Positions 3,505 to 62,039 of a stretch of DNA of 64,000 bases are shown here, in pieces. The notes below the pieces were generated by a model, which had not been told where the DNA came from, did no database searches, and saw only the letters and a list, made by a program, of their open reading frames with translations. The position numbers were made by a program, and so were the translations under genes. The DNA is from Macrostomum lignano (taxonomy: Eukaryota). Position 1 is the first letter of the stretch. The number at the start of each line of letters is the position of its first letter. The stretch lies in contig NIVC01002351.1 in the NCBI GenBank assembly GCA_002269645.1, positions 1-64,000 of the forward strand, given 5' to 3'.

Positions 3505-3745
3505 TGTGTGTCAGACAAACTGTCAGGAGTCTAATAGGAGTTTCTATAGGGTGTCAGACAAACTGTCACGAGTCTAATAGGAGTTTCTATAGGGTGTCAG
3601 ACAAACTGTCACGAGGCTAATAGGAGTTTCTATAGGGTGTCAGACAAAGTGTCAGAACTCTATTAGGAGTTTCTATAGGGTGTCAGACAAGCTGTCAGGA
3701 GTCTAATAGAAGTTTCTATAGGGTGTCAGACAAGCTGTCAGGAGA
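3505..3745. repeat. 43-bp tandem repeat, ~5.5 copies
   Basis: GGGTGTCAGACAAACTGTCACGAGTCTAATAGGAGTTTCTATA recurs at 3549, 3592 and onward. Confidence 0.93.
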
Positions 3746-21700: not shown

Positions 21701-23379
21701 CTGTCACCCATATCTAGCTATAGGAACCCCTGTCACCCATATCTATCTACAGAAACCCCTATTGTCACCCATATCTATCTATAGAAACCCCTGTCACCCA
21801 TACCAATCTATAAGAACCCCTGTTGTCACCCACATCTATCTATAGGAACCCCTGTCACCCATATCTATAGGAACCCCTGTCACCCATATCTATCTATAGG
21901 AACCCCTGTCACCCATATCTATAGGAACCCCTGTCACCCATATCTATAGGAACCCCTGTCACCCATATCTATAGGAACCCCTGTCACCGATATCTATCTA
22001 TAGGAACCCCTGTCACCCATATAGGAACCCCTGTCACCCATATCTATAGGAACCCCTGTCACCCATATCTATCTATAGGAACCCCTGTCACCCACATCTA
22101 TCTATGGGAACCCCTGTCACCCATATCTATCTACAGAAACCCCTATTGTCACCCATATCTATCTATAGAAACCCCTGTCACCCATACCAATCTATAAGAA
22201 CCCCTGTTGTCACCCACATCTATCTATAGGAACCCCTGTCACCCATATCTATAGGAACCCCTGTCACCCATATCTAGCTATAGGAACCCCTGTCACCCAT
22301 ATCTATCTATAAGAACCCCTGTTGTCACCCACATCTATCTATAGGAACCCCTGTCACCCATATCTATAGGAACCCCTGTCACCCATATCTATCTATAGGA
22401 ACCCCTGTCACCCACATCTATAGGAACCCCTGTCACCCATACCAATCTATAAGAACCCCTGTTGTCACCCACATCTATCTATAGGAACCCCTGTCACCCA
22501 TATCTATAGGAACCCCTGTCACCCATATCTAGCTATAGGAACCCCTGTCACCCATATCTATCTATAAGAACCCCTGTTGTCACCCACATCTATCTATAGG
22601 AACCCCTGTCACCCATATCTATAGGAACCCCTGTCACCCATATCTATAGGAACCCCTGTCACCCATATCTATCTATAGGAACCCCTGTCACCCATATCTA
22701 TAGGAACCCCTGTCACCCATATCTATAGGAACCCCTGTCACCCATATCTATCTATAGGAACCCCAGTCACCCACATCTATCTATAGGAACCCCTGTCACC
22801 CATATCTATAAGAACCCCTGTCACCCATATCTAGCTATAGGAACCCCTGTCACCCATATCTATTTATAGGAACCCCCTGTCACCCACATCTATCTATAGG
22901 AACCCCTGTCACCCATATCTATAAGAACCCCTGTCACCCATATCTATAAGAACCCCTGTCACCCATATCTATAGGAACCCCTGTCACCCATATCTATAAG
23001 AACCCCTGTCACCCATATCTATAGGAACCCCTGTCACCCATATCTATAAGAACCCCTGTCACCCATATCTATAAGAACCCCTGTCACCCATATCTATAGG
23101 AACCCCTGTCACCCATATCTATAAGAACCCCTGTCACCCATATCTAGCTATAGGAACCCCTGTCACCCATATCTATTTCCATATCTATTGGAAAAAACCT
23201 AGGTAATCCTTGTAAGGGTCCCTGTCGGTGACCTCTATATATATCACTTAAACTAATAGTAACTTACCGTCAAACATCATTGTCGGAAGCTGCGAGCGCC
23301 TTGCTGGCTGCTGCGACTGAGGCAGCGGTGGTGGCGGTGGCGGTGGCGCTTGAGGGTGTGACAGGAAATTGTCCATCAT
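12792..23379 (-). CDS. Pax3/7: Pax3/7-like paired-domain + paired-class (S50) homeodomain transcription factor, 6 exons, ~501 aa
   Basis: Exons 23379-23268 (MMDNFLSH...TMMFD G|GTAAGT), 18763-18584, 17805-17608, 14421-13696, 13193-13141, 13028-12792; all junction phases match (1506 nt). PAI: [19 protein letters not shown]...[10 protein letters not shown]; HD: RRCRTTF...THYP...[15 protein letters not shown]. The subfamily call rests on the GQGRVNQ and [14 protein letters not shown] motifs. Confidence 0.85.
13696..14421 (-). CDS. Pax3/7: Pax exon 4: Q/S-rich linker and homeodomain (HD at about 13920-14090)
   Basis: Acceptor CTCGCAG|AC; [11 protein letters not shown] with Ser50, typical of Pax homeodomains; donor CCGG|GTTAGT. 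Confidence 0.92.
14500..15428. repeat. 11-bp minisatellite (GAGGGCACACA) in Pax intron 3
   Basis: Read directly; source of the [19 protein letters not shown] pseudo-ORFs. Confidence 0.95.
16820..17555. repeat. ~20-bp minisatellite (CTACATCTCCCTTATCTCAAC) with longer composite units, Pax intron 3
   Basis: Read directly. Confidence 0.93.
17608..17805 (-). CDS. Pax3/7: Pax exon 3: paired-domain linker and RED subdomain
   Basis: [13 protein letters not shown]...[34 protein letters not shown]; acceptor GGCAG|GC, donor AGCG|GTGAGG. Confidence 0.9.
18000..18485. repeat. ~21-bp CT-rich minisatellite (TCTCGTCTCTTTCTCATGGA), Pax intron 2
   Basis: Read directly. Confidence 0.92.
18584..18763 (-). CDS. 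Pax3/7: Pax exon 2: paired-domain PAI subdomain
   Basis: [61 protein letters not shown]; phase-1 intron at ETG. Confidence 0.96.
18855..19050. repeat. ~21-bp GC-rich minisatellite (GGGCGCCCCTGTCTCTTGGT), block 1
   Basis: Read directly; same unit as 19410-19775. Confidence 0.88.
19410..19775. repeat. ~21-bp GC-rich minisatellite, block 2
   Basis: Read directly. Confidence 0.9.
20648..23180. repeat. 25-34-bp variable-unit minisatellite (AACCCCTGTCACCCATATCTATCTATAGG), Pax intron 1
   Basis: Read directly. Confidence 0.96.
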
Positions 23380-25609: not shown

Positions 25610-28600
25610 TGGATTTACAGAGTGCTATTTTGGATTAACAGAACGCCATTTTGGATTTACAGAACGCCATTTTGGATTTACAGAGTGCCATTTTGGATTT
25701 ACAGAATGCCATTTTGGATTTACAGAACGCCATTTTGGATTTACAGAGTGCCATTTTGGATTTACAGAGTGCCATTTTGGATTTACAGAGTGCCATATTG
25801 GATTTACAGAGTGCCATTTTGGATTTACAGAGTGCCATTTTGGATTTACAGAGTGCCATTTTGGATTTACAGAGTGCCATTTTGGATTTACAGAGTGCCA
25901 TTTTGGATTTTCAGAGTGCCATATTGGATTTACAGAGTGCCATTTTGGATTTTCAGAGTGCCATTTTGTATTTACAGAGTGCCATTTTGGATTTACAGAG
26001 TGCCATTTTGGATTTACAGAGTGCCATTTTGATTGAATTTACAGAGTGCCATTTTGATTGGATTTACAGAGTGCCATTTTGATTGGATTTACAGAGTGCC
26101 ATTTTGGATTTACAGAGTGCCATTTTGATTGGATTTACAGAGTGCCATTTTGGATTTACAGAACGCCATTTTGGATTTACAGAGTACCATTTTGGATTTA
26201 CAGAGTGCCATTTTGGATTTACAGAGTGCCATATTGAATTTACAGAGTGCCATTTTGGATTTACAGAGTGCCATTTTGATTGGATTTACAAGTGCCATTT
26301 TGGATTTCAGAGTGCCATTTTGGATTTACAGAACGCCATTTTGGATTTACAGAACGCCATTTTGGATTTACAAAGTGCCATTTTGGATTTACAGAATGCC
26401 ATTTTGGATTTACAGAACGCCATTTTGGATTTAAAGAGTGCCATTTTGGATTTACAGAGTGCCATTTTGGATTTACAGAGTGCCATATTGGATTTACAGA
26501 GTGCCATTTTGGATTTACAGAGTGCCATTTTGGATTTACAGAGTGCCATTTTGGATTTACAGAGTGCCATTTTGGATTTTCAGAGTGCCATATTGGATTT
26601 ACAGAGTGCCATTTTGGATTTACAGAGTGCCATTTTGTATTTACAGAGTGCCATTTTGGATTTACAGAGTGCTATTTTGGATTTACACAACGCCATTTTG
26701 GATTTACAGAGTGCCATTTCGGATTTACAGAGTGCCATTTTCGATTTACAGAGTGCCATTTTCGATTTACAGAGTGCCATTTTGGGTTTACAGAGTGCCA
26801 TTTTGGATTTACAGAGTGCCTTTTTCGATTTACAGAACGCCATTTTGGATTTACAGAATGCCATATTGGATTTTCAGAGTGCCATTTTGGATTTCAGAGT
26901 GCCATTTTGGATTTACAGAACGCCATTTTGGATTTACAGAGTGCTATTTTGGATTTACAGAGTGCCATTTTGGATTTACAGAGTGCCATTTTGGATTTAC
27001 AGAGTGCCATTTTGGATTTACAGAGTGCCATTTTGATTGAATTTACAGAGTGCCATTTTGATTGGATTTACAGAGTGCCATTTTGATTGGATTTACAGAG
27101 TGCCATTTTGATTGGATTTACAGAGTGCTATTTTGGATTTACAGAGTGCCTTTTTTGATTTACAGAACGCCATTTTGGATTTACAGAATGCCATATTGGA
27201 TTTACAGAGTGCTATTTTGGATTTACAGAGTGCCTTTTTGGATTTTCAGAGTGCCATTTTGGATTTACAGAGTGCCTTTTTGGATTTACAGAACGCCATT
27301 TTGGATTTACAGAGTGCCATTTTGGATTTACAGAGTGCTATTTTGGATTTACAGAACGCCATTTTGGATTTACAGAACGCCATATTGGATTTACAGAGTG
27401 CTATTTTGGATTTACAGAGCGCCATTTTGGATTTACAGAGTGCCCTTTTGGATTTTCAGAGTGCCCTTTTGGATTTACAGAGTGCCCTTTTGGATTTTCA
27501 GAGTGCCATTTTGGATTTACAGAGTGCCCTTTTGGATTTTCAGAGTGCCATTTTGGATTTACAGAGTGCCCTTTTGGATTTTCAGAGTGCCATTTTGGAT
27601 TTTCAGAGTGCCATTTTGGATTTCAGAGTGCCATATTGAATTTACAGAGTGCCATTTTGGATTTCAGAGTGCCATTTTGGATTTACAGAACGCCATTTTG
27701 GATTTACAGAGTGCCATTTTGGATTTACAGAGTGCCATTTTGGATTTACAGAGTGCCATTTTGGATTTACAGAGTGCCATTTTGGATTTACAGAGTGCCA
27801 TATTGAATTTACAGAGTGCCATTTTGGATTTACAGAGTGCCATTTTGATTGGATTTACAGAGTGCCATTTTGGATTTCAGAGTGCCATTTTGGATTTACA
27901 GAACGCCATTTTGGATTTACAGAGTGCCATTTTGGATTTACAGAGTGCCATTTTGGATTTACAGAGTGCCATATTGAATTTACAGAGTGCCATTTTGGAT
28001 TTACAGAGTGCCATTTTGATTGAATTTACAGAGTGCCATTTTGATTGGATTTACAGAGTGCCATTTTGATTGGATTTACAGAGTGCCATTTTGGATTTAC
28101 AGAGTGCCATTTTGATTGGATTTACAGAGTGCCATTTTGGATTTACAGAGTGCCATTTTGGATTTACAGAGTGCCATATTGAATTTACAGAGTGCCATTT
28201 TGGATTTTCAGAGTGCCATTTTGGATTTACAGAGTGCCCTTTTGGATTTTCAGAGTGCCCTTTTGGATTTACAGAGTGCCCTTTTGGATTTTCAGAGTGC
28301 CATTTTGGATTTACAGAGTGCCATTTTGGATTTACAGAGTGCCATTTTGGATTTTCAGAGTGCCATTTTGGATTTACAGAGTGCCATATTGAATTTACAG
28401 AGTGCCATTTTGGATTTCAGAGTGCCATTTTGGATTTACAGAACGCCATTTTGGATTTACAGAGTGCCATTTATGATTTACAGAGTGCCATATTGAATTT
28501 ACAGAGTGCCATTTTGGATTTACAGAGTGCCATTTTGGATTTACAGAGTGTCATATTGAATTTACAGAGTGCCATTTTGGATTTACAGAGTGCCATTTTG

Positions 28601-28960
28601 GATTTACAGAGTGCCATTTTGGATTTACAGAGTGCCATTTTGGATTTACAGAGTGTCATTTTGATTGGATTTACAGAGCGCCATTTTGGATTTAAAGAGT
28701 GTCATTTTGGATTTACAGAGCGCCATTTTGGATTTACAGAGTGCCATATTGGATTTACAGAGTGCCATATTGAATTTACAGAGTGCCATTTTGGATTTAC
28801 AGAGTGCCATTTTGATTGAATTTACAGAGTGCCATTTTGATTGGATTTACAGAGTGCCATTTTGATTGGATTTACAGAGTGCCATTTTGGATTTACAGAG
28901 TGCCATTTTGATTGGATTTACAGAGTGCCATTCTGGATTTACAGAGTGCCATATTAATGG
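25610..28960. repeat. 21-bp satellite (TTTTGGATTTACAGAGTGCCA), ~3.35 kb
   Basis: Read directly; the unit length is a multiple of 3, giving LDLQSAI/FWIYRVP/FGFTECH pseudo-ORFs. Confidence 0.97.
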
Positions 28961-29399: not shown

Positions 29400-30010
29400 T
29401 AGTATGACTCTAATAGGGTGAGATTATCAAATTCGATTGAATAGAATGATTCTCATAGGGTGAGATTATCAAATCCGATTCGATGGATTGATTCTAATAG
29501 GGTGAGAATATCAGATCCGATTCGATGGATTGATTCTCATAGAGTGAGATTATCAAATCTAATTCGATTGATTGATCCTAATAGGGTGAGAATATCAGAT
29601 CCGATTCGATGGATTGATTCTCATAGAGTGAGATTATCAAATCTAATTCGATTGATTGATTCTCATAGGGTGAGATTATCAAATATGATTCGATGGATAG
29701 ATTCTCATAGAGTGAGATTATCAAATCTAATTCGATTGATTGATTCTCATAGGGTGAAATTATCAAATCCGATTCGATGAATTGATTCTAATAGGGTGAG
29801 ATTATCAAATCCGATTGAATGGAATGATTCTCAAAGGGTCAGATTATCAAATCCGATTGAATAGAACAAATTTCATAGGGTAAGATTATCAAATCCGATT
29901 CGATGGATTGATTCTCATAGGGTGAGATTTTCAAATCCGATTGAATAGAATGATTCTCTTAGGGTGAGATTCTCCCAAAAATTGAATGGTCGATTCTCAT
30001 AGATGAGACT
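29400..30010. repeat. 42-bp minisatellite (AGGGTGAGATTATCAAATCCGATTCGATGGATTGATTCTCAT)
   Basis: Read directly. Confidence 0.92.
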
Positions 30011-30121: not shown

Positions 30122-33100
30122 TCAATCAATATTAATAGGCGATTCTGGCACGCCGGATCCACTCGGCTCTGGCGAGCTTCCAGTTGACTGGCTGGCATCG
30201 AGATCCACTGGCGCTAATCGACGTCTGCCGAAACTTTTAAAATTGAAGCTTCGGGCCTGCGGTTTCGACTGCTTCTGCTGCTGTTGGTGCTGCTGCGGAC
30301 CGGACCCACAAGCAAACATTTCTGACTGAGCCAAACTGAACAGCTCCGATCGGCCGGCCGCAGCTGCACTAAGCAGGCCAGGCAGAGGCGTCGAGTGGCC
30401 AACGGACGAGGAAGCGGCCGACGTCCAAAAGCAGGGAGTCGATGGCGGCGGCGGTGGATCGACTGACTTCTTTAAACCCGGCAACGGCAGGTATGGACTA
30501 CGAATCAAGTTTTCTTTTAGCGCCAAAGGTAACACGGATGTTGGTTGGTTGCTAGGTCGGTTGCTTTCGCTGCTGAATACGGCGGAAGCGTCGACGACGA
30601 ACGAATTATTGTTGTCGATGCTGGAGACTTCGGAGAGCTTAAATAGCGGCTGCTGCTGCGGTGGTGGTTTTGCAGTTTCTGTGCCAGCCGAGGCATTGGA
30701 TAAAGAGAGCGAACTCAAGGACAACATCTGGCTAAACCGTGGAGCCTGCTGCTGTTCTTGTAGCTTACTTTTGTTGTTGACACCTTCGTCACCACATTGC
30801 TCTGTGAGATGTTCCTCGGCTGCAACTGGAGTTGGCGCCTGCGATGTGGCTCCTGGGGATTCAAGTTGATCGTTAAAGAAGTGCGGCTCAATATCGCCGG
30901 AGGGAACTTCTGCCATAGTTGACTGCGTGGACGATTTAGCTGCATCAGTCTGCGAGGTTGAAGACTCATTAACCGTTGCATCAGTCGACTTCTCAACTAG
31001 TTCATCTGGTGAAGTATCTCTTGAATAACTTGATCTCGGTACTGAAGCCTCACCAGTGTTCTTGCCTGATGGTTCAGCGTTTGAGTGTTTTGCGCGTAAC
31101 GACACTGAAGCCTCAGAGGCAGTTTGACCCGATGACTCAACGATTGAGTGATTTGATGTTGGTACCGAGTTTTCAGCTGTATTTTGGTCCGATGACTTAA
31201 CAGTTGGTTTATATGATGTCGGAATAGAGTTCTGGGATGTAGTATGGCTTGATGGCTCAGCAGTAGGCTGGTGTGATGACTCAACGGTTGAGCGTACCGA
31301 TGTCGGTACTGAAACTTTGGAAGAAGCATGGCTTGATGATTCAGCAGCAGACTGGTGTGATGACTCAACGGTTGAGCGTACCGATGTCGGTACTGAAACT
31401 TTTGAAGAAGCATGGCCTGACGACTCAACGGCTAAGCAGTCCGGTATCGTTACCTTGGCAGAAGTCTGGTTTGACGACTCAACGGTTGAGCACTCTGATG
31501 TCGGTACCGAAGCCTTGGCAGAATTTGGACGAGAAGAATCGACAACAGTCAATTCTTCTGTTGATTTTTTCAGCTCCGTGAACTGAATGGTTGACTTGGA
31601 GTTTGATTGTGCAGCAGAAGTTTCATTATGCGTCAGAGCATGGGAGCTGCTCAAAGTGGCCGATGAGGCGGTAAACTTTGACGCAGACAAATCAATCGCA
31701 CCCAGTTGCCGACACACTCGACTTCTATTGAATATGGGTGACTGCGGTACAGCATTGAAATCTGTGCTACCTGCTGCATTGTGCGTTGACGAGACTGCCG
31801 ACTGCCTGCACACGGTGGACTTTGAGTCACAAGTCTGTTCTGCTGCATATCTCACATACTCAACAGCTGGGGGAGGCATATCAGGTGCAGTTAATGGGTT
31901 TGCGTTGCTGCACAAAGCTTGGCTGCTCTTGTTAGCAGTGCAATTGGTACTAGCATTTTTCTTGACTTGCACCTCGGCTTCAGAAAATTCCTTCACTGTA
32001 TTAACAGGCGGCAAGACTCCCGTTGAATCTAGACCATTAGCAACTGCGAGTGTTAAAGTGCTGTAAGAATCCTCAAGAATTGGCGATGTAATATGCTCCT
32101 CATCCAGCTTCACTTTAGTATTTCGACCATGACAGCTCGATGCAGCGGATGTCTGCGACAGACTTCTCTTCCGACTAGTAGGCGCAACAGATAGCGTAGC
32201 GCTTTGTGACTCGCACGTGAACTCCTCATTTGGACTTCGAATCAAGTCAGTTGAGCCTCCTGTCTGAGAAAAACGAGCTGCATTTTTATCAGAATTCTGA
32301 GACAGTATCAGCTTTTCCAGAGTCTCATAGACAGAAGTAGTCGCGGGAGACTCAAATGACGGCTCTTTCAGAATCTTCTTGTCCAGAGTCTCGTAGACGG
32401 AGGCGTTCGCGGGAGACTTGAATGAAGAAGCTTTCTGAGTCTTCTTGTCCAGAGACTCGTAGGCAGAAGCATTCGCGGGAGACTCAAACGACGGCTCTTT
32501 CAGAATCTTCTTGTCCTGAGACTCGTAGGCAGAAGCATTCGCGGGAGACTCGAATGACGGCTCTTTCAGAATCTTCTTGTCCAGAGACTCGTAGGCAGAA
32601 GCGTTCGCAGGAGACACAAATGACGGCTCTTTCAGAATCTTCTTGTCCAGAGACTCGTAGGCAGAAGCATTCGCGGGAGACTCGAATGACGGCTCTTTCA
32701 GAATCTTCTTGTCCAGAGACTCGTAGGCAGAAGCATTCGCGGGAGACTCAAACGACGGCTCTTTCAGAATCTTCTTGTCCTGAGACTCGTAGGCAGAAGC
32801 ATTCGCGGGAGACTCGAATGACGGCTCTTTCAGAATCTTCTTGTCCAGAGACTCGTAGGCAGAAGCGTTCGCAGGAGACACAAATGACGGCTCTTTCAGA
32901 ATCTTCTTGTCCAGAGACTCGTAGGCAGAAGCATTCGCGGGAGACTCGAATGAAGAAGCTTTCTGAGTCTTCTTGTCCAGAGACTCGTAGACAGAAGCAT
33001 TCGCGGGAGACTCAAATGAAGAAGCTTTCTGAGTCTTCTTGTCCAGAGACTCGTAGACAGAAGCATTCGCGGGAGACTCAAATGAAGAAGCTTTCTGAGT

Positions 33101-36100
33101 CTTCTTGTCCAGAGACTCGTAGACGGAGGCACTTGCAGTAGACTTTAGCAGAGACTCTTTGTAAACTTTTCTGTCCAGAGACTCGTAGGCAGAAGCGTTC
33201 CCAGCAGACTCTGACGAAGACTCTTTCTGCATTTTGGCATTCAGAAGGCTATCAAGCCTCGTGGCCGGCGATCTAGCAAACATTGGAGTATCCGATCTTG
33301 AGAAGGCTGAAGAAGGCCTATCCGGTAGGCACTTGTCGATAGCTGGGAAAGCTTCATCAAGCGATTCGTTGGGAGCAGCGGTGGTGTCGGAGCTCGGTCC
33401 AGCAGCTGCCGGAGCTGCGCCACCCGGTGCCAAGGACTGCCAATAGGACGGAGCCTCGCTACGCAACCGATTCATCGTTGACATAATGGATTGGTATTTG
33501 CTGCTCAGAGTGTTCAGCTGGGCGGCGTAGGAGCTGCTTGGCACTGACTTCGGTGGCAATGGCTGGACGCGCGGCGACAGGGGTACAGGAGACGGCGGCG
33601 GAAATGGTGGCGACTGAGGCAGACGCGGTGGTCTTGAAGATTCATCAGTGATGAAGTTCTTGGCTACGGTGAACTTGACATTCGAGGAAGTGGTTACAGA
33701 TGATGTTGATTTAGCTGCTGTTGTTATTGCTTTTGTTTCTGCTGTTGCTGCTGTTGTTTCTGTTGTTGTTATTGTTGTTATTGTTGTTATTGTTGTTGCT
33801 GTTGTTGTTGTTTCTGCTGCGGCTGCTGATTGACTGCCAGTGTTCACAAGCTTGGCCAGATCCGGGAGGCGGCTGTGGATGTAGCGGGACTCCGATTCCT
33901 TTAGGCTGAGAGCTGGAAAACAAGGAATAAAAGTAGGAACTGCGTGGGCTTATTGTGTAAAAACTCTTAGTAATCATTATTATTAAATTCTGTGGGCTTC
34001 AAGACATCAGAGATATACTATGTAGATGTTAGATTGATATCAGATACATGTACACGCTAGATAGATATCAATGATATTAGACAAATGTTGGATAGACATG
34101 AAATATAAAATTTATAGATACTAATTGGACACAAAGTACGCTCCCATTAGATGTAAAAACAGTCTTACTAGCAAGCAGTTTGGCACCGTGAGCCGTCGCT
34201 TCAGTTTGGGTGCTGTCGTTCAACAGTAGCACCTGAAGTTGCAGGAGTCCAACGAATGCGAGCTTGCCTCGAGTCAGTTGCAGCTTCTCTGTTGCCATAG
34301 TAACACTCAGACCGATTAGTTCGGGCATTCGAAGCAATTCCCCGTCCGAGTTGATGATTTTGCTACAAATGAGAAATAATGAATTGCTGACATGAAGTTC
34401 ATAAAAGTTTTAATCTACACTGAGGTGGTACGAGTCAATTTGCCCCAGTCTCACTTGATGCAGTAGGCCTGAAACTCAATTGCTGCTTTGGCAATTGGCC
34501 AACAGAAATCTTTGCAAGCGGCTAGTCGAGTCAGCTGTTCCAGGGCGCCGGTGAACTGACCGAGGCCCTTGATGTAGGACACGATTGAAAAGCGAAAACT
34601 GAGGTACCTGCCGATGGCGGAGTCCTGCAGCTGCGGGTTGTTGAGGAGATCAAAACTTGACAAAGAACTTTTGTCGAGGTTCCGAAATCACGAAATCAAA
34701 TATCCTTCCCAGTTCTAAATCCCAACGCCGATTAGAAATCTCGATTTGAAATCCCAGAAATCAGCTTTATAGATTTTGAGGATGGATTAACTCATTGTAG
34801 ATAAACCTTAGCTATTCACGATGGAAATACATGTAAAATATAGAAATAAAGTTTTTACAAACAAAAAAGGTTCCAAAATCGATTATGACTTATCAAGGTC
34901 AACGAAAATATAATATAATAACTAATAAGGATGATAAAATATTTGATTACACCTGTCCTAATGGGCAGATGTGCAACCGACAGCTCAGCCGCAGCTATTG
35001 CGCGGCGCATCTGAAGGCTGCGTACGGCTGTTCAGTCCAAGGACTGGGGGGTCGCCACACACACCCTCAATTACCCCAGCTAATGCTGGCACCCATTTTA
35101 CAGCTGGGTGAACTGAAGCAATGCAGAGTTAAGTGTCTTGCTCAAGGACAATAATTGTTCCGAATGGGTCCAGAATCGAACCCCCGACCTTTCAGTCGCG
35201 AGTCCAAGGGGATATCGTCCTACAACCAGCACTGAGACAATTCTGCCCATTCCGCTACTCCTGAGCCAATAATGTACGGGCACGCACTCACAGGGTGTAA
35301 AGTGGCCCTGACTTTCTAAATGTCAGACATGAATGTGGCCACAAACCACGGTAACTATATATTATCTCCCATACACCCGCTGTCATTGCATCCCGCTCTC
35401 ACCTCATTAGCCATCCCGGCAACAGTGACTCCAGTAGCAATGGATTCTTTGCTGCCCTCCTGAAGCAGAGTCTCAGCGTATAGGCGCAACAGTATCGCCT
35501 GAAAGAATCGGTTCAATGGTTATTGAAAAATGCTTTCATTTTAAAATACTCAGTCTCTTTCATAGAGAGAGAGAGTGAGAGAGAGAGAGACAGTACCTTA
35601 TCGAAGCTGGCCATGCGCACTGAGGAGCTTTTTGCCAGATTAAATGCAACGCTGAGCCAGTGAATGGCGTCAGAAAATTTTCCATCTTGGAAGCGTTGCA
35701 GCCCGAAGCGGTAGAGCAGGCTGATAAATCGGAGCGACTGGTTTATTGGCAGGTTGGAGTAGATTTATAATAACGTAGGTTGGATTGTTAGATTGGTAGT
35801 TGGACACGTCGGTAGATAGTTAAGTAGTTTTATATTTAGGTATGTCGACAGTTTAACAAATTGGTTGCTGGGTAGTTTGGTAGTTGGGTAGGTTTGTTTT
35901 TGGGTAGGTTGGGTGCTAGGTAGGTTGGGTGCTAGATGGGTTGGTTGTTGGGTAGGTTGGGTGCTAGGTAGGTTGGGTGCTAGATGGGTTGGTTGTTGGG
36001 TAGGCTGGGTGCTAGGTAGGTTGGGTGCTAGGTAGGTTGGGTGCTAGATGGGTTGGTTGTTGGGTAGGCTGGGTGCTAGGTAGGTTGGGTGCTGGGTATT

Positions 36101-38091
36101 TTTGGGTAGGTTGGGTGTTGGTTAGGTTGGTTGTTGGGTATTGTTGAGTAGGTTGGGTGTTGGTTAGGTTGGTTGTTGGGTAGGTTATATTGGGTTATGT
36201 TAGGCTGGTTGTTGGCAGCATTGATAGATCTATGTTGGCAACTGTGTTGGGTAGATAAGCACTGCGTCAAGCGGTAGTCAGCCATTAACTTACGTGCATA
36301 TTGAGTTTAGCATCGCTAACTAAATCTAGCAGAAGATTCTCATAGTCCAACACCTTGTGATCTTTGTTCCTGCCGTCCATCTGGAAAGCATTAGTTTGAA
36401 ACCATAACTGTAATACTACGTCTATTAGAGTGCAATAGCGGTTAGGCTGTATGCTCGCGCACTTACAAACCAGATCTCTAACTGCATTTTAATCATAGTC
36501 AATGCTACTGAATTTGAAAAATGTCTCAAATCGACGTTTCCGCCGCTAAAGTACACCTTGGCCTCGTTGTAATAGGCCTTGGTGAAGCCCAGCACTCGCT
36601 GACAGTCGGCCGTACTGTTGTGGATAAGGAACAGGCTGCAAGTTTCCATGGCACACTGGAAGTTGGTACGTTTTTAAAAAGTAAAACTGATAAACAGGCG
36701 CGATTCTTGTCAATTGTAGAGACTAGTCTCTAATAAATAAAAGCATCATACCACGCAAAAGAACTTCATATCGCGGATGCGCTCGCTAAACGATGGTTCA
36801 ACAGACAGAAACAGTTCGAGCAAAAGGGCTTTGACTGTAAAAAAGAAGAGTTGGTGAAAGTCGAAAGTGCAATCGATAATACGAGTACAAATGTGAGCTT
36901 ATGATCGAGTTGGTTGAGGATCGAATGGCTGCTATAGAGGGGGCCGATTGAATGGCGGATAGAGGGGGCCGATTGAATGGCGGATAGAGGGGGCCGATTG
37001 AATGGCGGATAGACGGGGCCGATTGAATGGCGGATAGAGGGAGCCGATTGAATGGCGGATAGAGGGGGCGGATTGAATGGCGGATAGAGGGGGAGGATTG
37101 AATGGCGGATAGAGGGGGAGGATTGAATGGCGGATAGATGGGGTGGATTGAATGGCAGATAGAGGGGGCGGATTGAATGGCGGATAGAGGGGGCCGATTG
37201 AATGGCGGATAGAGGGGGCCGATTGAATGGCGGATAGAGGGGGCCGATTGAATGGCAGATAGAGGGGGCGGATTGAATGGCGGATAGAGGGGGCCGATTG
37301 AATGGCAGATAGAGGGGGCGGATTGAATGGCGGATAGAGGGGGAGGATTGAATGGCGGATAGAGGGGGCGGATTGAATGGCGGATAGAGGGGGCGGATTG
37401 AATGGCGGATAGAGGGGGCCGATTGAATGGCGGATAGAGGGGGCCGATTGAATGGCGGATAAAGGGGGCCGATTGAATAGCGGATAGAGGGGGCCGATTG
37501 AATGGCGGATAGAGGGGGCCGATTGAATGGCGGATAGAGGGGGCCGATTGAATGGCGGATAAAGGGGGCCGATTGAATGGCGGATAGAGGGGGCCGATTG
37601 AATGGCGGATAGAGGGGGCCGATTGAATGGCGGATAGAGGGGGCCGATTGAATGGCGGATAGAGGGGGCCGATTGAATGGCGGATATAGAAGGTGGATTG
37701 AATTGAGGAAACAAATAAATAGAAGGTGCAAGAATTCAAAGGCAGCATACATGCATCACCAACCTTCAAATAACGGCTTTCCCACACGCAGTCGTTTTCC
37801 GGAAGAGGTGGCAACAGAGTTCCACAAATTGCAGCATTGCTCCAGAATCTGCAAACGTTTTAGTTCGGTTCCGGTTGTTTTGGGAAATCCTACATCAAAT
37901 GATTAAAGCCTACGTAAAGCACAAATTGCATACCTGAAAACGATGTTCGCTCAGGTGCAAACCGGCCAATAATTGCCTGGAAATCAATCTTCGACAGCTG
38001 GTTATACTGTCAAAAAGATTTTGACGCCTGCAGAACGCTGCCTTGACGTCTTTGAGATGGTCTATTAAGGATTTGTAACGGTTTGGAAATT
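30122..38091 (-). CDS. TEX11: TEX11/ZIP4/SPO22-like N-terminal TPR module fused to a long Ser/Thr-rich repeat tail (~1670 aa)
   Basis: Phase-consistent exons 38091-37934, 37848-37764, 36834-36752, 36655-36467, 36380-36294, 35737-35597, 35498-35403, 34630-34455, 34362-34169, 33912-30122; possible first micro-exon 38362-38347 (MNAYT, weak). Collinear matches to human TEX11 as recalled: CCNLWNS~AVNLWNW; LLYRFG...FSDAIHWLSVAF~LCYNFG...YEESSFWLSQSY; ILLRLYA~KVLRLLA; GMANE~NLANK; KDFCWPIAK~LDFCLNIAK; RYIHSRL~NWLHNIL. Confidence 0.78.
32310..33200 (-). repeat. 66-bp coding tandem repeat (22 aa, SAYESLDKKILKEPSFESPANA), ~14-15 units
   Basis: Visible in the 1241-aa ORF; the frame stays open through all units. 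Confidence 0.93.
34905..35240 (-). mobile_element. tRNA-derived CORE-SINE in a TEX11-like intron
   Basis: Minus strand reads: tRNA-like head with B-box GGTTCGATTC (35182-35173), then GTCCTTGAGCAAGACACTTAAC...CAGTTCACCCAGCTGTAAAATGGG (35149-35092) resembling the MIR/CORE domain (ACCTTGGGCAAGTTACTTAAC...CATCTGTAAAATGGG), and an AT-rich (TATTA) tail. Confidence 0.75.
35885..36200. repeat. GT-rich ~13-bp minisatellite (TAGGTTGGGTGC) in an intron
   Basis: Read directly. Confidence 0.88.
36935..37690. repeat. 25-bp minisatellite (GAGGGGGCCGATTGAATGGCGGATA), ~30 copies, in an intron
   Basis: Read directly. Confidence 0.96.
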
Positions 38092-38493
38092 CTGTAATTC
38101 AAATCTAGTTTATTATCATGGTGTATTTTAACTTTATTCAAATCCTTAGCTGTTTAGATTACGTGCGTAATTATTCTAGGGTTTTAATGTTACGTATTTT
38201 GTTAATTTGGTTTCCGTTTCCAAGAAATGCGACTCATAATTTTAACATGTAAGTTCTAGTCTTTTTCTGTAAGCGTGTGGCAGCCTGGGACGTAGATCAA
38301 CCTAGCATGTACGTGAGATACAATAATTATAATCAGAGCCGATCACCAGTGTACGCATTCATACTAAGACAGTAAGATTTCTTATGCTCCGAGTATAGTA
38401 AATCGTCCAGGACTGACAGACGTATCTGCTGAACCATTGATATACGTTGCTAATACTCTCTCTTCGCTAGTAATATTAAATATACCGGACTCG

Positions 38494-39595
38494 TTACAGA
38501 TTGAGGAGAAATAAGTTAACAGAACAGCATAGCCTTTTGAAATTAAGGAGTCTGGAGGATGCATCCTTGAAATACGACCAAATCAGTTGTCAACATCTTA
38601 ATACACGACACTAGCTACCAGTGGTTGACACTCTTCTGGCAGTGTCAACAACTTACAAGCAACACTAGCAGTGGCTCGTCACTCTCTCCTGGCACAATGT
38701 CAAACAACTTACTAAGCAACACTACCAATGGCTCGTCACTCTCTCCTGACACAATGTCAAACAACTTACTAAGCAACACTACCAATGGCTCGTCACTCTC
38801 TCCTGACACAATGTCAAACAACTTACTAAGCAACACTATCAGTGGCTCGTCACTCTCTCCTGATACAATGTCAAACAACTTACTAAGCAACACTACCAAT
38901 GGCTCGTCACTCTCTCCTGACACAATGTCAAACAACTTACTAAGCAACACTATCAGTGGCTCGTCACTCTCTCCTGATACAATGTCAAACAACTTACTAA
39001 GCAACACTATCAGTGGCTCGTCACTCTCTCCTGACACAATGTCAAACAACTTACTAAGCAACACTACCAATGGCTCGTCCCTCTCTCCTGGCACAATGTC
39101 AAACAACTTACTAAGCAACACCAGCAGTGGCTCGTCACTCTCTCCTGGCACAATGTCGCTCACAGACGGCGCCATATATGATTCTGTGCATTGATAATCA
39201 CAGTCAGAAGTTGCGACACCAGTCGAGTCAATGTTGCCGGCACCTGTGTCAATATCGCTGTCGCTTTCATCGCTGTCCCTATTGTGGCTGGATGCCTGCG
39301 GCACCATTGGACTCCATTGAGTTTGATAGGCATCCTTAGAACTTCCGTTAGTTGAAATGAATCGCTTCTTTCTTGGCACGTTTACGTTTGCCTCAGATTC
39401 TTAAGATAAAAGGTAAGGGATGATTAATTATTTTTTTACTAAATGAGCACTTTATTTTTATCAGAGTTTAGAGGGTGTTTCAAATTTTATATAATATATA
39501 CATACCATCATCTAGACTTGATGACGTCAAGGATGATGGATTGGGACTTCCTGCACGCCTCATTGACACAACTTGGTCTATAGAGAATTGCTGTC
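38494..39595 (-). CDS. 3' part of an unidentified gene (acidic/Ser-rich, PRKKR NLS-like, 19-aa repeats); 5' end not found
   Basis: Phase-consistent exons 39595-39506 (TTGCAG|...|GTATGT), 39399-38657 (TCTTAAG|...|GTAAGT) and a possible terminal exon 38565-38494. No homology recognised. Confidence 0.5.
38650..39160. repeat. 57-bp tandem repeat, 9 units, open on both strands (DIVSGESDEPLIVLLSKLF on minus)
   Basis: ACTTAC recurs every 57 bp from 38651 to 39106. Confidence 0.95.
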
Positions 39596-42464: not shown

Positions 42465-44315
42465 ATGTTAAACGGACGCGGTCAACTGTCCTTATCGAGC
42501 CCTAAGCGTGACAGCTGGTCATCATCCGGTGATACCAGCTACTATGACGCCAGAGACCAACTCACTGGCGACGAGCTTGAAGCAGACGAAGCCAATGCTG
42601 GGAGATACAACGCGGCGCTAAGCGTAGTTGACACGTCGCGGGACTTACAAAATGCGCACGACAGAGCCACAGCCTATTACGACAACACAGCCTATCTCCA
42701 TGACAACGGTCCCGTAGCTACTAAGAGTCTAGCAAGCAGTGATGGCACTCTGAAAGGCACTTTCTACAAGAAGAAAAAGATGTTCCAACGAAACAAGAAG
42801 AACCAGTTACCAGCGCACCTGAGAGCTGAGACAAACATAGATTCTACAACAACCGGAGGGGAGGATGAAAGTGCCGCACCTGGCGTTGAAGTAGAAGAGA
42901 CTGACGACGACTTCGGTTTTAAATACCGGCCATCGATACCGCCGCCAAGGCCGCTGATTCAGTCTGCACCATCCGTTGGCCTGACTCTCGAAGACACGCT
43001 CAGCATGAAGCGATCGGACCGCCCAGCAACTGCCGCGCATCCAGTAGGCTTCCCTAACGGCGGCGCAGAGATCCGCAGCAGCGGAATCCTGCTGGAAACC
43101 AACATCGACTCCGAATTGGACGACAACTCTTCAATCCCGTCATCGTACTACCCTGATCAGATGAAGCGACCCGAACAACAGTCCCAGCAACAGCTACAAA
43201 GCTCTCACCATGACGGTCAACCGGGCATTTCTCAGCCATACGTTCGACCGCCTCCAGCCGTGGTGCCCATGGTGCCATTTCATTTCAACACCGCCGTTCG
43301 CGAAGAGGATGAGGATACAGATGCCACCGCGGCCGTGGAAGATGACGACGAAAACTCTTCTGGGACGACACCCGCCGGCTTCCACGAGGAGGTACCTCGA
43401 ATGGCATCAGGCAGCGGCTGGAGTCCATACTCTCCGGTGTCTCCAAGCGGAACCGTCATAGAAAACGGAGTGCCGCAGCACAAGTTTGCTCCGTCTCCTT
43501 TCAAATCGCCCGCGGCCACGTCAATGACCATATCGGCTCAGTCGCAGGCTGGCAGGAGTCCGCATCAGTACCCTGGCCCGGCGCCACCTCGGATGATGGC
43601 GCGGTTAGATACAGATTTTGAAGTGAGCTCAGACGAAATGGACTTCACAGAGACGACGCCGGGAGACATGGCTATTCTGGAGTATTCCAGAGCCTTGGAG
43701 GAGGCCGAGCGAATGCGCCACATCGCCGGTGGTAACTACGTATTCGCTAAGCCTCCAGCCTCGCAGTTGACCAACTCAGTGCCCGATTTCATCAATTACT
43801 CGGGTCGCTACGCGAGCAACATCACCGGCTCCGTGGGAATTCGGGCCAAGTCGATGAACACGCTCACAGCGTCGCGCAGCTCCCTGCACAGCAGCGGCGT
43901 CAGCGGCAAAGAACTACTGACGCCAGGCAGGGCCAGACGGGCCTCCCTGCGCAGGAGTCGCTTGGGTCTGGAGCCCGGCGGCGGCGTCTACACCATCCCG
44001 GTTTTTGACGACTCCAACCCGACTCTGGTGTCCGGCAACAGTCAAACTAACTTTGCAGGGCCGAGGCACTTGCCGGGAGAGTTCGACGAACCGACGGTAC
44101 CCGAGGTACAGCATCACGGACCAGTGCGGTCGAGCAAGCAGATGAGCTGCCTGGAACGATGCGACAATGTCTGCTGTCCGAACACGCCGCGTAGGCTACT
44201 GGTCCGGTATCTGCTCATTGCCGGCATCTGCGTCTGCTGCGTCCTGCTGGGTGTAGCGGTGGCGGTTATTGTCATCAGCACCAGGCCAAAGACGGATAAT
44301 ACCAGCGGCGCCTAG
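42465..44315 (+). CDS. Hypothetical disordered protein with a single C-terminal transmembrane helix (tail-anchored-like)
   Basis: Non-repetitive 616-aa ORF rich in S/P/E/D; C-terminal YLLIAGICVCCVLLGVAVAVIVIST preceded by a Cys cluster. Confidence 0.8.
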   Translation: MLNGRGQLSLSSPKRDSWSSSGDTSYYDARDQLTGDELEADEANAGRYNAALSVVDTSRDLQNAHDRATAYYDNTAYLHDNGPVATKSLASSDGTLKGTFYKKKKMFQRNKKNQLPAHLRAETNIDSTTTGGEDESAAPGVEVEETDDDFGFKYRPSIPPPRPLIQSAPSVGLTLEDTLSMKRSDRPATAAHPVGFPNGGAEIRSSGILLETNIDSELDDNSSIPSSYYPDQMKRPEQQSQQQLQSSHHDGQPGISQPYVRPPPAVVPMVPFHFNTAVREEDEDTDATAAVEDDDENSSGTTPAGFHEEVPRMASGSGWSPYSPVSPSGTVIENGVPQHKFAPSPFKSPAATSMTISAQSQAGRSPHQYPGPAPPRMMARLDTDFEVSSDEMDFTETTPGDMAILEYSRALEEAERMRHIAGGNYVFAKPPASQLTNSVPDFINYSGRYASNITGSVGIRAKSMNTLTASRSSLHSSGVSGKELLTPGRARRASLRRSRLGLEPGGGVYTIPVFDDSNPTLVSGNSQTNFAGPRHLPGEFDEPTVPEVQHHGPVRSSKQMSCLERCDNVCCPNTPRRLLVRYLLIAGICVCCVLLGVAVAVIVISTRPKTDNTSGA

Positions 44316-53144: not shown

Positions 53145-53552
53145 CTGCAATGGAAAGATTAAATCTGTAATAATTCGAGTCTACGAGTCAGCTTCATCTT
53201 CATCGTTAGACACAACGACGGATTAATAGTGAAAATGCAGCTATGGTTATGAAAATATGCAGACAAAAGTATTTAAGTGCAGACGCACTCGCTCAGTCTA
53301 TATTTTAAAGGAAATTATACTCTTACTCCATTTCAAATTCCATAGAAATAAAAAGCTATTTGCTTCAGACTAGATCAAGGATATTAAGTAAAGGCCCTTT
53401 AAGTCCCACAAGGACTCTTGACTAAAATGAAGGGGTTACTGAGCACAGTAATAAGAGTAAACACTACATTTAGAGCTCATGAACCTAAGAACAGCATTTG
53501 GCATCACCCCAGCCAGGTGCAATGAGGTAGAAATAGGGTTTGTCTAAGCATG

Positions 53553-54680
<1,128 letters not shown>

Positions 54681-55817: not shown

Positions 55818-56514
55818 CTACCCCCCTGACAGCCCCAGCCTCACACGCAAGTTAACCAAGTTAGTGCCTCAGAAGCTCCCACACGTCGCCCCCTCAGTTT
55901 AGCAAGTAGTGGACCCGTGCAAATCCAGGCTAGCAGGCCTGCGCAAGGGCGAGAATAAAAATGCAAATCAAGGGACACAGCAGAAAATCAAGGCGGCAAC
56001 AAGCGGATGAAGAAGAAGACTTATGATGAAGTAAAAAGATTGCAGGACTCTACCAGTCTGCCCAGCTCCCCAATCAGCGGTGGACCGAGGTCAGAAAGTC
56101 AGCTAGTACCCTCGGCATCGAAGGGCTGAGAAACTCGGACAATTCCCCATGGACCTTCGGTTGACAAGCCGGGCCTCATCGGGTGACTGGCGAGCCCCCT
56201 GAGCAGCTGAGAAAGCCAGCAGCCTGCTTCAATCAGAGTCTCCTGGAAGAAGCAAAACGCACAATTAATTATGTGAGTGCGTTCTGTCGGGCTTCTAGGA
56301 CAGGGGGGGGGGGGTGACAGAACTGAGACTGAGACTTTGGCAACCGAATCCCATGGGCGTTTGAAAATTCGAATTTTGCTCTGAAAGTTGATAGCGAACT
56401 GAGCATCCTGTGCAGCTTTCACTTAGCACAGGAGTTTACAATTGCAGTCCATCATAATGCCTTTGCATGCACTTTTATGGTCTATTGTAATAACTCATTT
56501 TGTTTAAACTCTTC

Positions 56515-61585: not shown

Positions 61586-62039
61586 GATAATAATGAGATC
61601 TAGCAAAAAATGATTATGGCTATAATTTGGGAGCAGTAAAGCATATTGCTGCATAAAACATCACAGGTAAAAGTCCATTTGTAGCTAAGCCAGTGAACTT
61701 CATTACAAAGAACACATCGCATTCAGAAGACCATCTTTGTGCTGTGGCAACACCTACGCAAATTTTCGCGGCTCAAGCTACCGGCCCTTCCTTGGTTTCA
61801 ATAAAAGTGTTCTCATGTAACAGTCTTTGAAAATACTAAGGCAAAATGGCTTTCCTATTTCCTTATTTTCCTTTCTACACTTGGAGATTAGATGAATTGT
61901 CAAGAGTAATCTTGTTAAATCTCGCCTTTCAAAGCGGAAAGTTCAACTGCTATCATTGACTGAACTTTCTTCTATACCCTACTGAATCTAAATGCGAACT
62001 TGATCAATAAGTAGAACCGGCTTAGAGATCTAACAAAGG

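What the first reader, a model, noticed from the sequence alone, without database searches (positions are those of the whole stretch)
30122..38362. Meiotic ZMM protein TEX11/ZIP4 truncated and fused to a ~1240-aa disordered repeat tail
Seen: nine small exons give about 400 aa collinear with the TEX11 N-terminal SPO22/TPR region, and similarity stops at YIHSRL (~LHNILW) early in the next exon. That 3.8-kb exon then continues stop-free as T/S/P/Q-rich sequence. No further TPR exons are visible before satellite DNA. Known: TEX11/Zip4 is a roughly 900-aa all-TPR scaffold coupling crossovers to the synaptonemal complex. Inference: a neofunctionalised paralogue or chimera lacking the C-terminal half, possibly a condensate-forming or dominant-modulating meiotic scaffold.
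Basis: partly seen in the sequence, partly recalled or inferred. Interest (0 to 1): 0.8.

Follow-up and report, generated by a model that had tools for sequence, protein, structure and literature searches.

The report
Half a TEX11/ZIP4 plus disordered tail
A flatworm (Macrostomum lignano) gene, annotated only as a hypothetical protein, joins a domain resembling the first part of the meiotic crossover scaffold TEX11/ZIP4 to a 1263-residue unstructured tail and lacks the conserved C-terminal half; this is a real gene architecture, but whether it acts in meiosis is untested.

Summary
The window is Macrostomum lignano scaffold NIVC01002351.1, positions 1-64000. The feature is the annotated gene BOX15_Mlig015105g5 (PAA58640.1, "hypothetical protein, partial").

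The core observation holds:
- Small GT-AG exons encode a helical domain.
- The last of them splices in frame into a 3791-nt exon (33912-30122) that stays open for 1263 codons.
- My genomic model is 100% identical to the RNA-seq-derived GenBank protein, apart from 7 skipped 22-aa repeat units.

- Its first exon (38362) lies in an intron.
- The gene starts at 39563, with two more exons upstream.

TEX11 homology is real but weak:
- Pfam SPO22 is below threshold (18.1 against 27.5 bits).
- A tetrapod TEX11 HMM gives 27.9 bits (P about 3e-11; 2000 shuffles reach at most 6.9).
- hhalign gives E 1e-4 for TEX11 residues 208-346.
- The three best six-frame hits in the whole window are collinear exons of this gene.

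Nothing matches TEX11 beyond residue about 350. There is no C-terminal WN patch, and the tail is predicted to be coil.

All three subgenome copies share the architecture.

Still open: germline expression, any meiotic role, and whether a canonical TEX11 also exists. Verdict: a new variant of a known kind, of moderate interest.

The parts
39506..39563 (-). Exon 1. The first in-frame ATG is at 39563 (MRRAGSPNPSS...). The GenBank CDS is 5'-partial and opens at 39608.
   Evidence: The donor is GATG|gtatgt.
39112..39399 (-). Exon 2. It encodes an acidic, Ser-rich disordered N-terminus with PRKKRF. It ends at the first unit of the 57-bp minisatellite (donor TTA|gtaagt).
   Evidence: AF2 predicts coil for residues 1-116 of P0004.
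38643..39157 (-). 57-bp minisatellite, 9.1 units. It repeats the last 38 nt of exon 2 plus the first 19 nt of intron 2, so eight units carry an in-frame TTA|GTAAGT donor. The reading frame stays open through all units.
   Evidence: The UniRef model P0001 reads through several units, whereas the GenBank models use the first donor.
37934..38061 (-). Exon 3 (NHLKDVKAAF...). The helical domain begins here.
37764..37848 (-). Exon 4. It carries ILEQCCNLWNS, which matches the TEX11 N-terminal motif EE..NLWNW. The invariant residues L61, W62 and N63 are conserved.
   Evidence: invariant columns; six-frame hit to HMM positions 43-68; hhalign alternative hit 53-67 <-> 158-172, E 0.08.
36752..36834 (-). 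Exon 5.
36467..36655 (-). Exon 6.
36294..36380 (-). Exon 7.
35597..35737 (-). Exon 8 (SLRFISLLYRFGLQRFQDGKFSDAIHWLSVAFNLAK...). This is the best TEX11/SPO22-like segment. It keeps the invariant TEX11 residues Y211, G214, W229, L230 and S231.
   Evidence: Pfam SPO22 stretch.; the top six-frame hit of the window, 13 bits, HMM 206-269.
35403..35498 (-). Exon 9 (AILLRLYAETLL...MANE). It is part of the SPO22-like match.
34455..34630 (-). Exon 10 (...KDFCWPIAKAAIEF...). It is the end of the statistically supported TEX11 match. The donor is CATCAA|gtgaga.
   Evidence: six-frame hit to HMM 272-332.
34169..34362 (-). Exon 11. It encodes the last helices of the folded domain and has no significant TEX11 match.
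30122..33912 (-). Exon 12: 3791 nt, 1263 codons plus the TGA at 30124-30122. The first roughly 25 residues end the helical domain. The rest is a low-complexity S/A/T/P/E-rich tail with one predicted helix (SSYAAQLNTLSSKYQSIMSTMNRLRSE).
32312..33211 (-). Coding 66-bp minisatellite inside exon 12: 13.6 units of the 22-aa repeat ASAYESLDKKILKEPSFESPAN. Copy number differs between the three subgenome copies. The GenBank CDS skips 7 units.
31244..31427 (-). Coding 84-bp repeat inside exon 12: 2.2 units of the 28-aa unit SSHASSKVSVPTSVRSTVESSHQ...
   Evidence: translation.
36934..37686 (.). 25-bp satellite (30 units) filling most of intron 4.
35861..36186 (.). 16/48-bp minisatellite in intron 7.

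Best explanation
This is one expressed protein-coding gene of Macrostomum lignano: Mlig015105.g5, GenBank PAA58640.1, 12 exons, window 39563-30122 on the minus strand, 1771 aa from the genome.

The protein has three parts:
1. About 115 aa of acidic, Ser-rich disordered N-terminus with a PRKKRF basic patch.
2. About 415 aa of paired alpha-helices (roughly 20 helices, or 10 TPR-like hairpins). This part is a divergent homologue of the N-terminal part of the meiotic ZMM scaffold TEX11/ZIP4, covering the NLWN motif and the SPO22 region (TEX11 about 50-350).
3. A 1263-aa low-complexity tail encoded by a single exon. It contains an expandable 22-aa coding minisatellite.

The C-terminal half of TEX11/ZIP4 is absent from the protein and from the locus. 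That half includes its most conserved surface patch, the aromatic-Asn (WN) site that binds the synaptonemal-complex central-element proteins Ecm11/TEX12.

Shown here: gene structure, reading frame, transcript-based annotation, the same architecture in all three subgenome copies, TEX11 similarity, and absence of a C-terminal match.

Inferred, not shown: the protein acts as a TEX11-like adaptor. Its TPR surfaces would still engage some partners of the crossover machinery, although which TEX11 partners bind the N-terminal half is not mapped. It could not make the canonical WN-patch contact to the synaptonemal-complex centre. The long flexible, Ser/Thr-rich tail would instead supply multivalent or phospho-regulated contacts.

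No evidence here places the gene in the germline.
For: Gene and transcript evidence:
- Identity of the locus: the window is 100% identical to NIVC01002351.1, with the same coordinates.
- Exon model: all junctions are GT-AG and all phases are consistent.
- The model is 100% identical to PAA58640.1 over all 1617 aligned residues. The only difference is 154 aa (7 x 22) of repeat that GenBank skips.
- The GenBank annotation of this assembly derives from RNA-seq and transcriptome assemblies, with transcript boundaries cut at trans-splice and poly(A) evidence (PMC5730564).
- The other two copies carry the same exons and the same junction. The L003 copy has an intact 1297-codon open frame.
- The three copies fit the three subgenomes described for this assembly (PMC10733133).
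- The open frame is far beyond chance.

TEX11 homology:
- SPO22 is the best Pfam family, E 0.002, and no generic TPR family was listed at E<=1.
- hhalign against 14 tetrapod TEX11: E 1.1e-4, probability 56%, 132 columns.
- hmmsearch with that profile: 27.9 bits, P 2.9e-11. The maximum of 2000 shuffles is 6.9 bits and the reversed sequence scores -3.3.
- Among 1897 six-frame segments of the window, the three best hits are three collinear exons of this gene.
- Residues invariant across tetrapod TEX11 are conserved: L61 W62 N63, Y211 G214, W229 L230 S231, A279 N280, D321 C323.

Absence of the C-terminal half:
- No hit to HMM positions above 400 on either strand.
- The tail has no WN and only 2 Trp.
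- AF2 predicts coil for the tail apart from one 30-aa helix (mean pLDDT 32). The same single-sequence method gave about 20 helices for the N-terminal domain.
- On this strand, a Pax gene starts by about 18.8 kb, and the sequence between it and this gene is largely tandem repeats.
Against: - Pfam SPO22 is below its gathering score (18.1 against 27.5 bits) and covers only profile positions 35-127 of 274.
- The hhalign probability is only 56%.
- phmmer of the 844-aa copy against 1.84 billion representative proteins found no relative outside M. lignano. The homology therefore rests on a directed comparison with a shallow, tetrapod-only profile (Neff about 2).
- With that divergence, a C-terminal half as diverged as the N-terminal one might escape the six-frame scan. 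Its absence is better argued from the stop codon and the coil prediction than from the scan.
- No solved structure matched.
- Both AF2 models have low confidence (pLDDT 41 and 32).
- No expression, localisation or phenotype data were found.
- Purifying selection on the tail could not be tested.
- No AATAAA was seen in the roughly 150 nt read between the stop codon and the 42-bp satellite.
Confidence: 0.7

Rival explanations
1. The gene is a paralogue that coexists with a canonical full-length TEX11 elsewhere in the M. lignano genome. It then acts as a modulator or has drifted to another role, rather than being the animal's only ZIP4-type protein.
For: - Nothing here excludes it, because the genome outside this window and the two sister loci could not be searched.
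- The human-TEX11 search returned 690 hits, of which only the best 120 (all tetrapods) were shown.
Against: - phmmer with the 844-aa copy against 1.84 billion representatives found only this gene's own copies. Any canonical TEX11 in the M. lignano proteome would therefore have to be too diverged from this gene to detect, so it would not be a recent duplicate.
- The three copies present are subgenome copies with identical architecture.
Confidence: 0.3
2. The N-terminal domain is a lineage-specific helical-repeat domain, and its resemblance to TEX11 is generic TPR-like or convergent. The protein is then simply an orphan flatworm protein with a long disordered tail.
For: - The Pfam hit is below threshold.
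- The hhalign probability is 56%.
- There is no homologue in 1.84 billion representatives.
- The only PDB matches are designed consensus TPR proteins, at E 0.07.
Against: - The directed HMM score is 21 bits above the best of 2000 shuffles.
- SPO22, not a generic TPR family, is the only relevant Pfam match.
- The matches are collinear across separate exons.
- They coincide with residues invariant in tetrapod TEX11, including the NLWN motif, which lies outside the main aligned block.
Confidence: 0.15
3. The fusion is an annotation or assembly artefact. Two adjacent genes (a TEX11-like gene and a gene for a low-complexity protein), or a polycistronic precursor, were merged by short-read transcript assembly.
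For: - About 7% of assembled M. lignano transcripts are precursors that encode more than one protein (PMC5730564).
- The GenBank CDS is flagged partial and bridges the repeat array with an artificial gap.
- The first ATG within exon 12 lies about 145 codons in, so a separate product cannot be excluded.
Against: - There is no stop codon between the two parts, and the junction is a canonical in-frame cis-splice.
- The annotation pipeline cuts transcripts at trans-splice sites and did not cut here.
- The same junction and frame occur on three different scaffolds.
- The helical domain itself runs about 25 residues into exon 12.
Confidence: 0.07

Closest known systems
TEX11 / ZIP4 / Spo22 (ZMM scaffold of the Zip2-Zip4-Spo16 complex; Pfam SPO22 PF08631)
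   Same: - An N-terminal NLWN motif.
- A SPO22-like block (TEX11 about 206-346) that keeps many residues invariant in tetrapods.
- An all-helical, paired-helix (TPR-like) organisation, with the matches collinear across exons.
   Different: - Canonical proteins are about 900-950 aa, with about 21 TPRs over the whole length and a C-terminal helix. Their most conserved patch (the WN motif) binds Ecm11/TEX12 (PMC8763056).
- Here only about 10 hairpins are present. There is no match beyond TEX11 residue about 350 and no WN patch.
- 1263 aa of low-complexity sequence follow, and 115 disordered residues precede.
- Pfam's threshold is not reached.
TaZIP4-B2, the duplicated and diverged ZIP4 copy of polyploid wheat (PMC8065865, abstract only)
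   Same: A ZIP4-type gene in a recent polyploid, which is the setting in which a diverged ZIP4 copy is known to matter for meiosis.
   Different: - In wheat one extra copy diverged from otherwise canonical full-length ZIP4 genes.
- Here all three subgenome copies share the same unusual architecture, so the architecture predates or is independent of the polyploidy.
- No meiotic phenotype is known.
FANCD2 (the name UniRef gives the 280-aa fragment A0A1I8IUK2 of this gene family)
   Same: Nothing demonstrable.
   Different: - No FancD2 Pfam match was found for the fragment or for the N-terminal domain.
- No match was found to any PDB chain; FANCD2 structures are, to my knowledge, in the PDB.
- The name appears to be a mis-annotation.

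Membership tests
TEX11/ZIP4/Spo22 | Pfam SPO22 (PF08631) match at or above the gathering score | tested here: not met
   18.1 bits against a cut-off of 27.5, E 0.002. Only profile positions 35-127 of 274 are matched.
TEX11/ZIP4/Spo22 | Significant, specific sequence similarity to bona fide TEX11 in the SPO22 region | tested here: met
   - 27.9 bits, P 2.9e-11, against a 14-species tetrapod TEX11 HMM.
- 2000 shuffles reach at most 6.9 bits, and the three best six-frame hits of the window are collinear exons of this gene.
- hhalign E 1.1e-4, probability 56%.
TEX11/ZIP4/Spo22 | N-terminal (E-E)...N-L-W-N-W motif | tested here: met
   ILEQCCNLWNS in exon 4 keeps the invariant L61, W62 and N63 of alignment A1. 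The motif match alone is not significant (E 0.08).
TEX11/ZIP4/Spo22 | TPR array spanning the whole protein (about 21 repeats, about 900 aa) ending in a C-terminal helix (PMC8763056) | tested here: not met
   Helices are predicted only for about residues 119-546 of the 844-aa copy, roughly 20 helices. The remaining 1192 residues tested are predicted to be coil with one helix. Both models have low confidence.
TEX11/ZIP4/Spo22 | C-terminal conserved patch with the aromatic-Asn (WN) motif that binds Ecm11/TEX12 | tested here: not met
   No hit to HMM positions above 400 on either strand of the window. The tail has no WN dipeptide and only two Trp.
TEX11/ZIP4/Spo22 | Meiotic (germline) expression and membership of a ZZS complex with SHOC1/Zip2 and SPO16 | not testable with these tools
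   No paper text or held supplementary file mentions Mlig015105, or TEX11 in M. lignano.
FANCD2 | FancD2 Pfam domain, or similarity to solved FANCD2 chains | tested here: not met
   no match at E up to 10.
Canonical TPR proteins (Pfam TPR_1/2/12 and similar) | Match to a generic TPR repeat model | tested here: not met
   One search lists no TPR family at E<=1. PDB consensus-TPR designs match only at E 0.07.

The most novel reading that the evidence does not exclude
This gene is the only ZIP4/TEX11-type gene of Macrostomum lignano. The lineage has lost the C-terminal TPR half, including the WN patch that couples crossover sites to the synaptonemal-complex central element, and replaced it with a long, repeat-expandable disordered tail. 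Crossover-to-synapsis coupling in this flatworm would then be wired differently from yeast, plants and mammals, for example through multivalent tail contacts.
Probability: 0.2. Interest if true: 0.7.

Novelty: new variant of a known kind. Interest (0 to 1): 0.45.

Why it matters
TEX11/ZIP4 is described as the hub that links crossover designation to synaptonemal-complex assembly. Its C-terminal WN patch is reported to be its most conserved surface (PMC8763056).

An animal whose only recognisable TEX11-type protein keeps the N-terminal half and swaps the C-terminal half for 1263 residues of low-complexity sequence would be a natural separation-of-function allele. It would let one ask which ZIP4 functions need the synaptonemal-complex contact.

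M. lignano has an established transgenesis method (PMC5730564) and is a recent polyploid (PMC10733133).

On the practical side, the gene is currently a "hypothetical protein" in GenBank, and a fragment of it is named FANCD2 in UniRef. Both annotations can be improved.

If a canonical TEX11 turns up elsewhere in the genome, or the gene proves to be somatic, the finding reduces to a diverged orphan with a weak TPR relationship.

Tried and rejected
It lies in intron 2 and is absent from the RNA-based models.
- My own first boundaries for exons 3, 4 and 10: these broke the frame and were corrected by splice phase.
- FANCD2 identity suggested by the UniRef name of P0001: no Pfam or PDB support.
- Word-indexed homology searches with the spliced N-terminus and with the tail: only M. 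lignano's own proteins came back.
- Exhaustive phmmer of the 844-aa copy against 1.84 billion representatives: only self-hits, plus a bacterial HU-like protein that matches a Thr/Pro low-complexity stretch.
- PDB sequence search: only designed consensus TPRs, at E 0.07.
- AF2 single-sequence models: confidence was too low (pLDDT 41 and 32) to justify a fold search. I used them only for secondary-structure contrast.
- I did not build an AF2 alignment from TEX11 sequences, because it would bias the model towards TEX11.
- Ka/Ks on the tail: no power. From intron 5 to the stop codon the window and the L003 copy are essentially identical, introns included, and the L002 tail exon differs only inside the 66-bp repeat array. 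For the N-terminal exons dN/dS is about 0.17, but it rests on only 11 differences.
- Short-motif counts in the tail (SQ/TQ, SP/TP, RVxF, SIM, D-box): none exceeds the composition expectation.
- Search for C-terminal TEX11 exons elsewhere in the window, both strands: none found.
- Literature and supplement searches for Mlig015105, or for TEX11 in flatworms: nothing.
- tRNA and Rfam scans of the window: nothing.

Full report
**What the sequence is.**
A homology search with the translated big exon returned Macrostomum lignano proteins. Looking up the contig of the longest cluster member showed that the window is 100% identical to GenBank scaffold NIVC01002351.1 of assembly Mlig_3_7 (GCA_002269645.1), with window coordinates equal to record coordinates.

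The feature is the annotated gene BOX15_Mlig015105g5, product PAA58640.1, "hypothetical protein, partial", 1632 aa. The GenBank annotation of this assembly comes from genome-guided and de novo transcriptome assemblies. Transcript boundaries were set from trans-splicing and poly(A) evidence, and ORFs were called by TransDecoder (PMC5730564).

**Gene structure.**
I rebuilt the exons from the DNA by reading frame, GT-AG sites and splice phase. On the minus strand they are:

| Exon | Coordinates |
|---|---|
| 1 | 39563-39506 |
| 2 | 39399-39112 |
| 3 | 38061-37934 |
| 4 | 37848-37764 |
| 5 | 36834-36752 |
| 6 | 36655-36467 |
| 7 | 36380-36294 |
| 8 | 35737-35597 |
| 9 | 35498-35403 |
| 10 | 34630-34455 |
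| 11 | 34362-34169 |
| 12 | 33912-30122 |

This gives 1771 aa. The model is 100% identical to PAA58640.1 at every aligned position. The only differences are 15 extra residues upstream of the first Met in the partial GenBank CDS, and 154 residues (7 units of 22 aa) that GenBank skips inside a repeat array.

**The big exon.**
Exon 12 is open for 1263 codons.
- From base composition, the chance of no stop is about 10^-24.
- The other five frames carry 36-80 stops.
- Shuffled sequence never exceeds 253 codons.
- Composition is S 19%, A 11%, T 8%, P 8%, E 7%.
- It contains a 66-bp coding minisatellite (13.6 units of a 22-aa repeat) and an 84-bp repeat.
- Pfam finds nothing in it.
- A single-sequence AlphaFold2 model of 1192 of its residues is coil apart from one helix of about 30 residues (mean pLDDT 32).
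- The same method on the 844-aa copy predicted about 20 helices between residues 119 and 546, with pLDDT 45-64.

Both models have low confidence, so I use only this contrast.

**Is the N-terminal domain TEX11/ZIP4?**
The evidence is mixed in strength but consistent in direction.

Weak results:
- Pfam's best family is SPO22, but at 18.1 bits, below the 27.5-bit cut-off. No generic TPR family was listed at E<=1.
- An exhaustive phmmer search against 1.84 billion representatives found no relative outside M. lignano.
- The PDB gave only designed consensus TPRs at E 0.07.

Directed tests. I fetched real TEX11 sequences. The query was human TEX11 recalled from memory; the database's human entry matched it at 99%, and only database sequences were used afterwards. 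I aligned 14 tetrapod species.
- hhalign of that alignment against the flatworm protein gives E 1.1e-4, probability 56%, over 132 columns (TEX11 208-346).
- hmmsearch with the profile gives 27.9 bits, P 2.9e-11. The best of 2000 shuffles scores 6.9 bits and the reversed sequence -3.3.
- In a six-frame scan of all 1897 stop-free segments of the window, the three best hits are three exons of this gene in collinear order:

| Exon | TEX11 HMM positions |
|---|---|
| 4 | 43-68 |
| 8 | 206-269 |
| 10 | 272-332 |

- Residues invariant in tetrapod TEX11 are kept: NLWN; Y..G; WLS; AN; D.C.

I conclude that homology to the N-terminal part of TEX11 is probable (about 0.8). Formal Pfam membership is not met.

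**Is the C-terminal half missing?**
According to PMC8763056, Zip4/TEX11 has about 21 TPRs over its whole length. Its most conserved patch, the C-terminal aromatic-Asn (WN) motif, binds Ecm11 or TEX12.

Here:
- Nothing matches profile positions beyond about 350 on either strand of the 64-kb window.
- The tail has no WN and only two Trp.
- The tail is predicted to be coil.
- The CDS ends at a TGA at 30124-30122.
- Downstream on this strand the sequence is largely tandem repeats, followed by a Pax gene whose paired box is at 18779-17540 and whose homeobox lies in 14500-13694.

The six-frame scan has limited power at this divergence. The stop codon, the transcript-based model and the coil prediction carry more weight.

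**Other copies.**
Two further scaffolds carry the same gene (g4 on NIVC01002056, g6 on NIVC01000277), with the same exons and the same exon 11-12 junction.
- g4 has an intact 1297-codon open frame.
- g6 is cut by the scaffold end and has a net +65-nt difference inside the repeat array.

Three copies fit the three subgenomes reported for this assembly (PMC10733133). They are therefore copies of one gene, not diverged paralogues. The architecture is not a local misassembly.

**Selection.**
Between the window and g4, the N-terminal exons show 7 synonymous and 4 non-synonymous differences (dN/dS about 0.17). From intron 5 to the stop codon the two copies are essentially identical, introns included. 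Upstream introns and the flanks differ by 2-12%. The tail therefore offers no test of constraint. The identical block suggests gene conversion or assembly homogenisation.

**Mechanism.**
Shown: one transcript-supported ORF joins a TEX11-like helical domain to a long low-complexity tail and lacks the TEX11 C-terminal half.

Inferred from what is known of Zip4/TEX11 (PMC8763056, PMC5859969):
- The retained TPR surfaces could still bind some crossover-machinery partners.
- The canonical WN-patch contact to the synaptonemal-complex centre cannot be made.
- The tail could provide flexible, multivalent or phospho-regulated contacts.

The tail shows no enrichment of SQ/TQ or SP/TP sites, or of the other motifs tested. 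No expression data for the gene were found. The meiotic role is therefore a hypothesis.

**Rivals.**
- A paralogue alongside an undetected canonical TEX11 (about 0.3; this is compatible with the architecture but changes its significance).
- A lineage-specific helical protein with only generic resemblance (about 0.15).
- An annotation merge of two genes (about 0.07).

**Verdict.**
The gene is already in GenBank as a hypothetical protein. Its TEX11 relationship and its missing C-terminal half were not mentioned in any paper or held supplement that I could search. I rate it a new variant of a known kind, with interest 0.45.

Noticed in passing
window 38643-39157 (minus strand): A 57-bp minisatellite (9.1 units) duplicates the exon 2 / intron 2 boundary. 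Eight units carry a consensus donor TTA|GTAAGT, the unit length is 19 codons, and the frame stays open through all units. Use of a later donor would therefore add in-frame 19-aa repeats (ESDEPLxVLLSKLFDIVxG). The GenBank models use the first donor; the UniRef model A0A1I8IUK2 reads through several units.
   Followed up: partly
P0001 = UniRef A0A1I8IUK2 (matches window about 39563-37780): This 280-aa fragment of the gene family is named 'Fanconi anemia group D2 protein' in UniRef. No FancD2 Pfam hit and no PDB hit support the name. It looks like a mis-annotation.
   Followed up: yes
window 36750-30122 versus L003 11960-18667: From intron 5 to the stop codon, the window and the g4 subgenome copy are essentially identical: 2 mismatches in about 1950 intron bases, and none in the exon 12 sequence compared at both ends outside the repeat array. 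Upstream introns, the 5' flank and the 3' flank differ by 2-12%. This suggests recent gene conversion between subgenomes, or homogenisation during assembly or polishing.
   Followed up: partly
window 32312-33211; L002 about 3470-3700: The 66-bp coding minisatellite differs in copy number between the three copies (one extra unit in L003). In L002 the net difference is +65 nt, which breaks the frame. The GenBank CDS models bridge the array by skipping units (7 units in the window's own model), probably because short-read transcripts collapsed the repeat.
   Followed up: partly
window about 18779-13694 (minus strand): A Pax-type gene lies downstream on the same strand. Paired-box halves are at 18779-18552 (E 6e-33) and 17854-17540 (E 1.5e-14). 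A homeodomain (E 5e-22) lies within the open segment 14500-13694. Satellites sit in its introns.
   Followed up: partly
window about 9419-4450 (minus strand): Exons of an ionotropic-glutamate-receptor-like gene. The segment 7542-6979 hits Pfam Lig_chan at E 1e-14.
   Followed up: partly
window 42465-44315 (plus strand): A single-exon 616-aa ORF, annotated as a gene in GenBank with no Pfam family on record. It is Ser/Pro-rich, has a C-terminal hydrophobic stretch, and is transcribed divergently from the TEX11-like gene.
   Followed up: no
whole window, e.g. 1-1855, 20646-23176, 25610-28952, 53552-54680, 56514-58049, 60076-61598: Tandem repeats are unusually dense: 63 Tandem Repeats Finder rows, with micro- and minisatellites of period 4 to 183 bp. 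Many fill introns and intergenic DNA, and several keep long spurious open frames. The 21-bp satellite at 25610-28952 and the 42-bp one at 29404-29971 start just downstream of this gene's stop codon.
   Followed up: no
window about 35290-35150 (minus strand, intron 9): A stretch looks tRNA-derived (…GGTTCGATTCTGGACCC…), which might indicate a SINE. ARAGORN and Rfam report nothing there, so this is unverified.
   Followed up: partly
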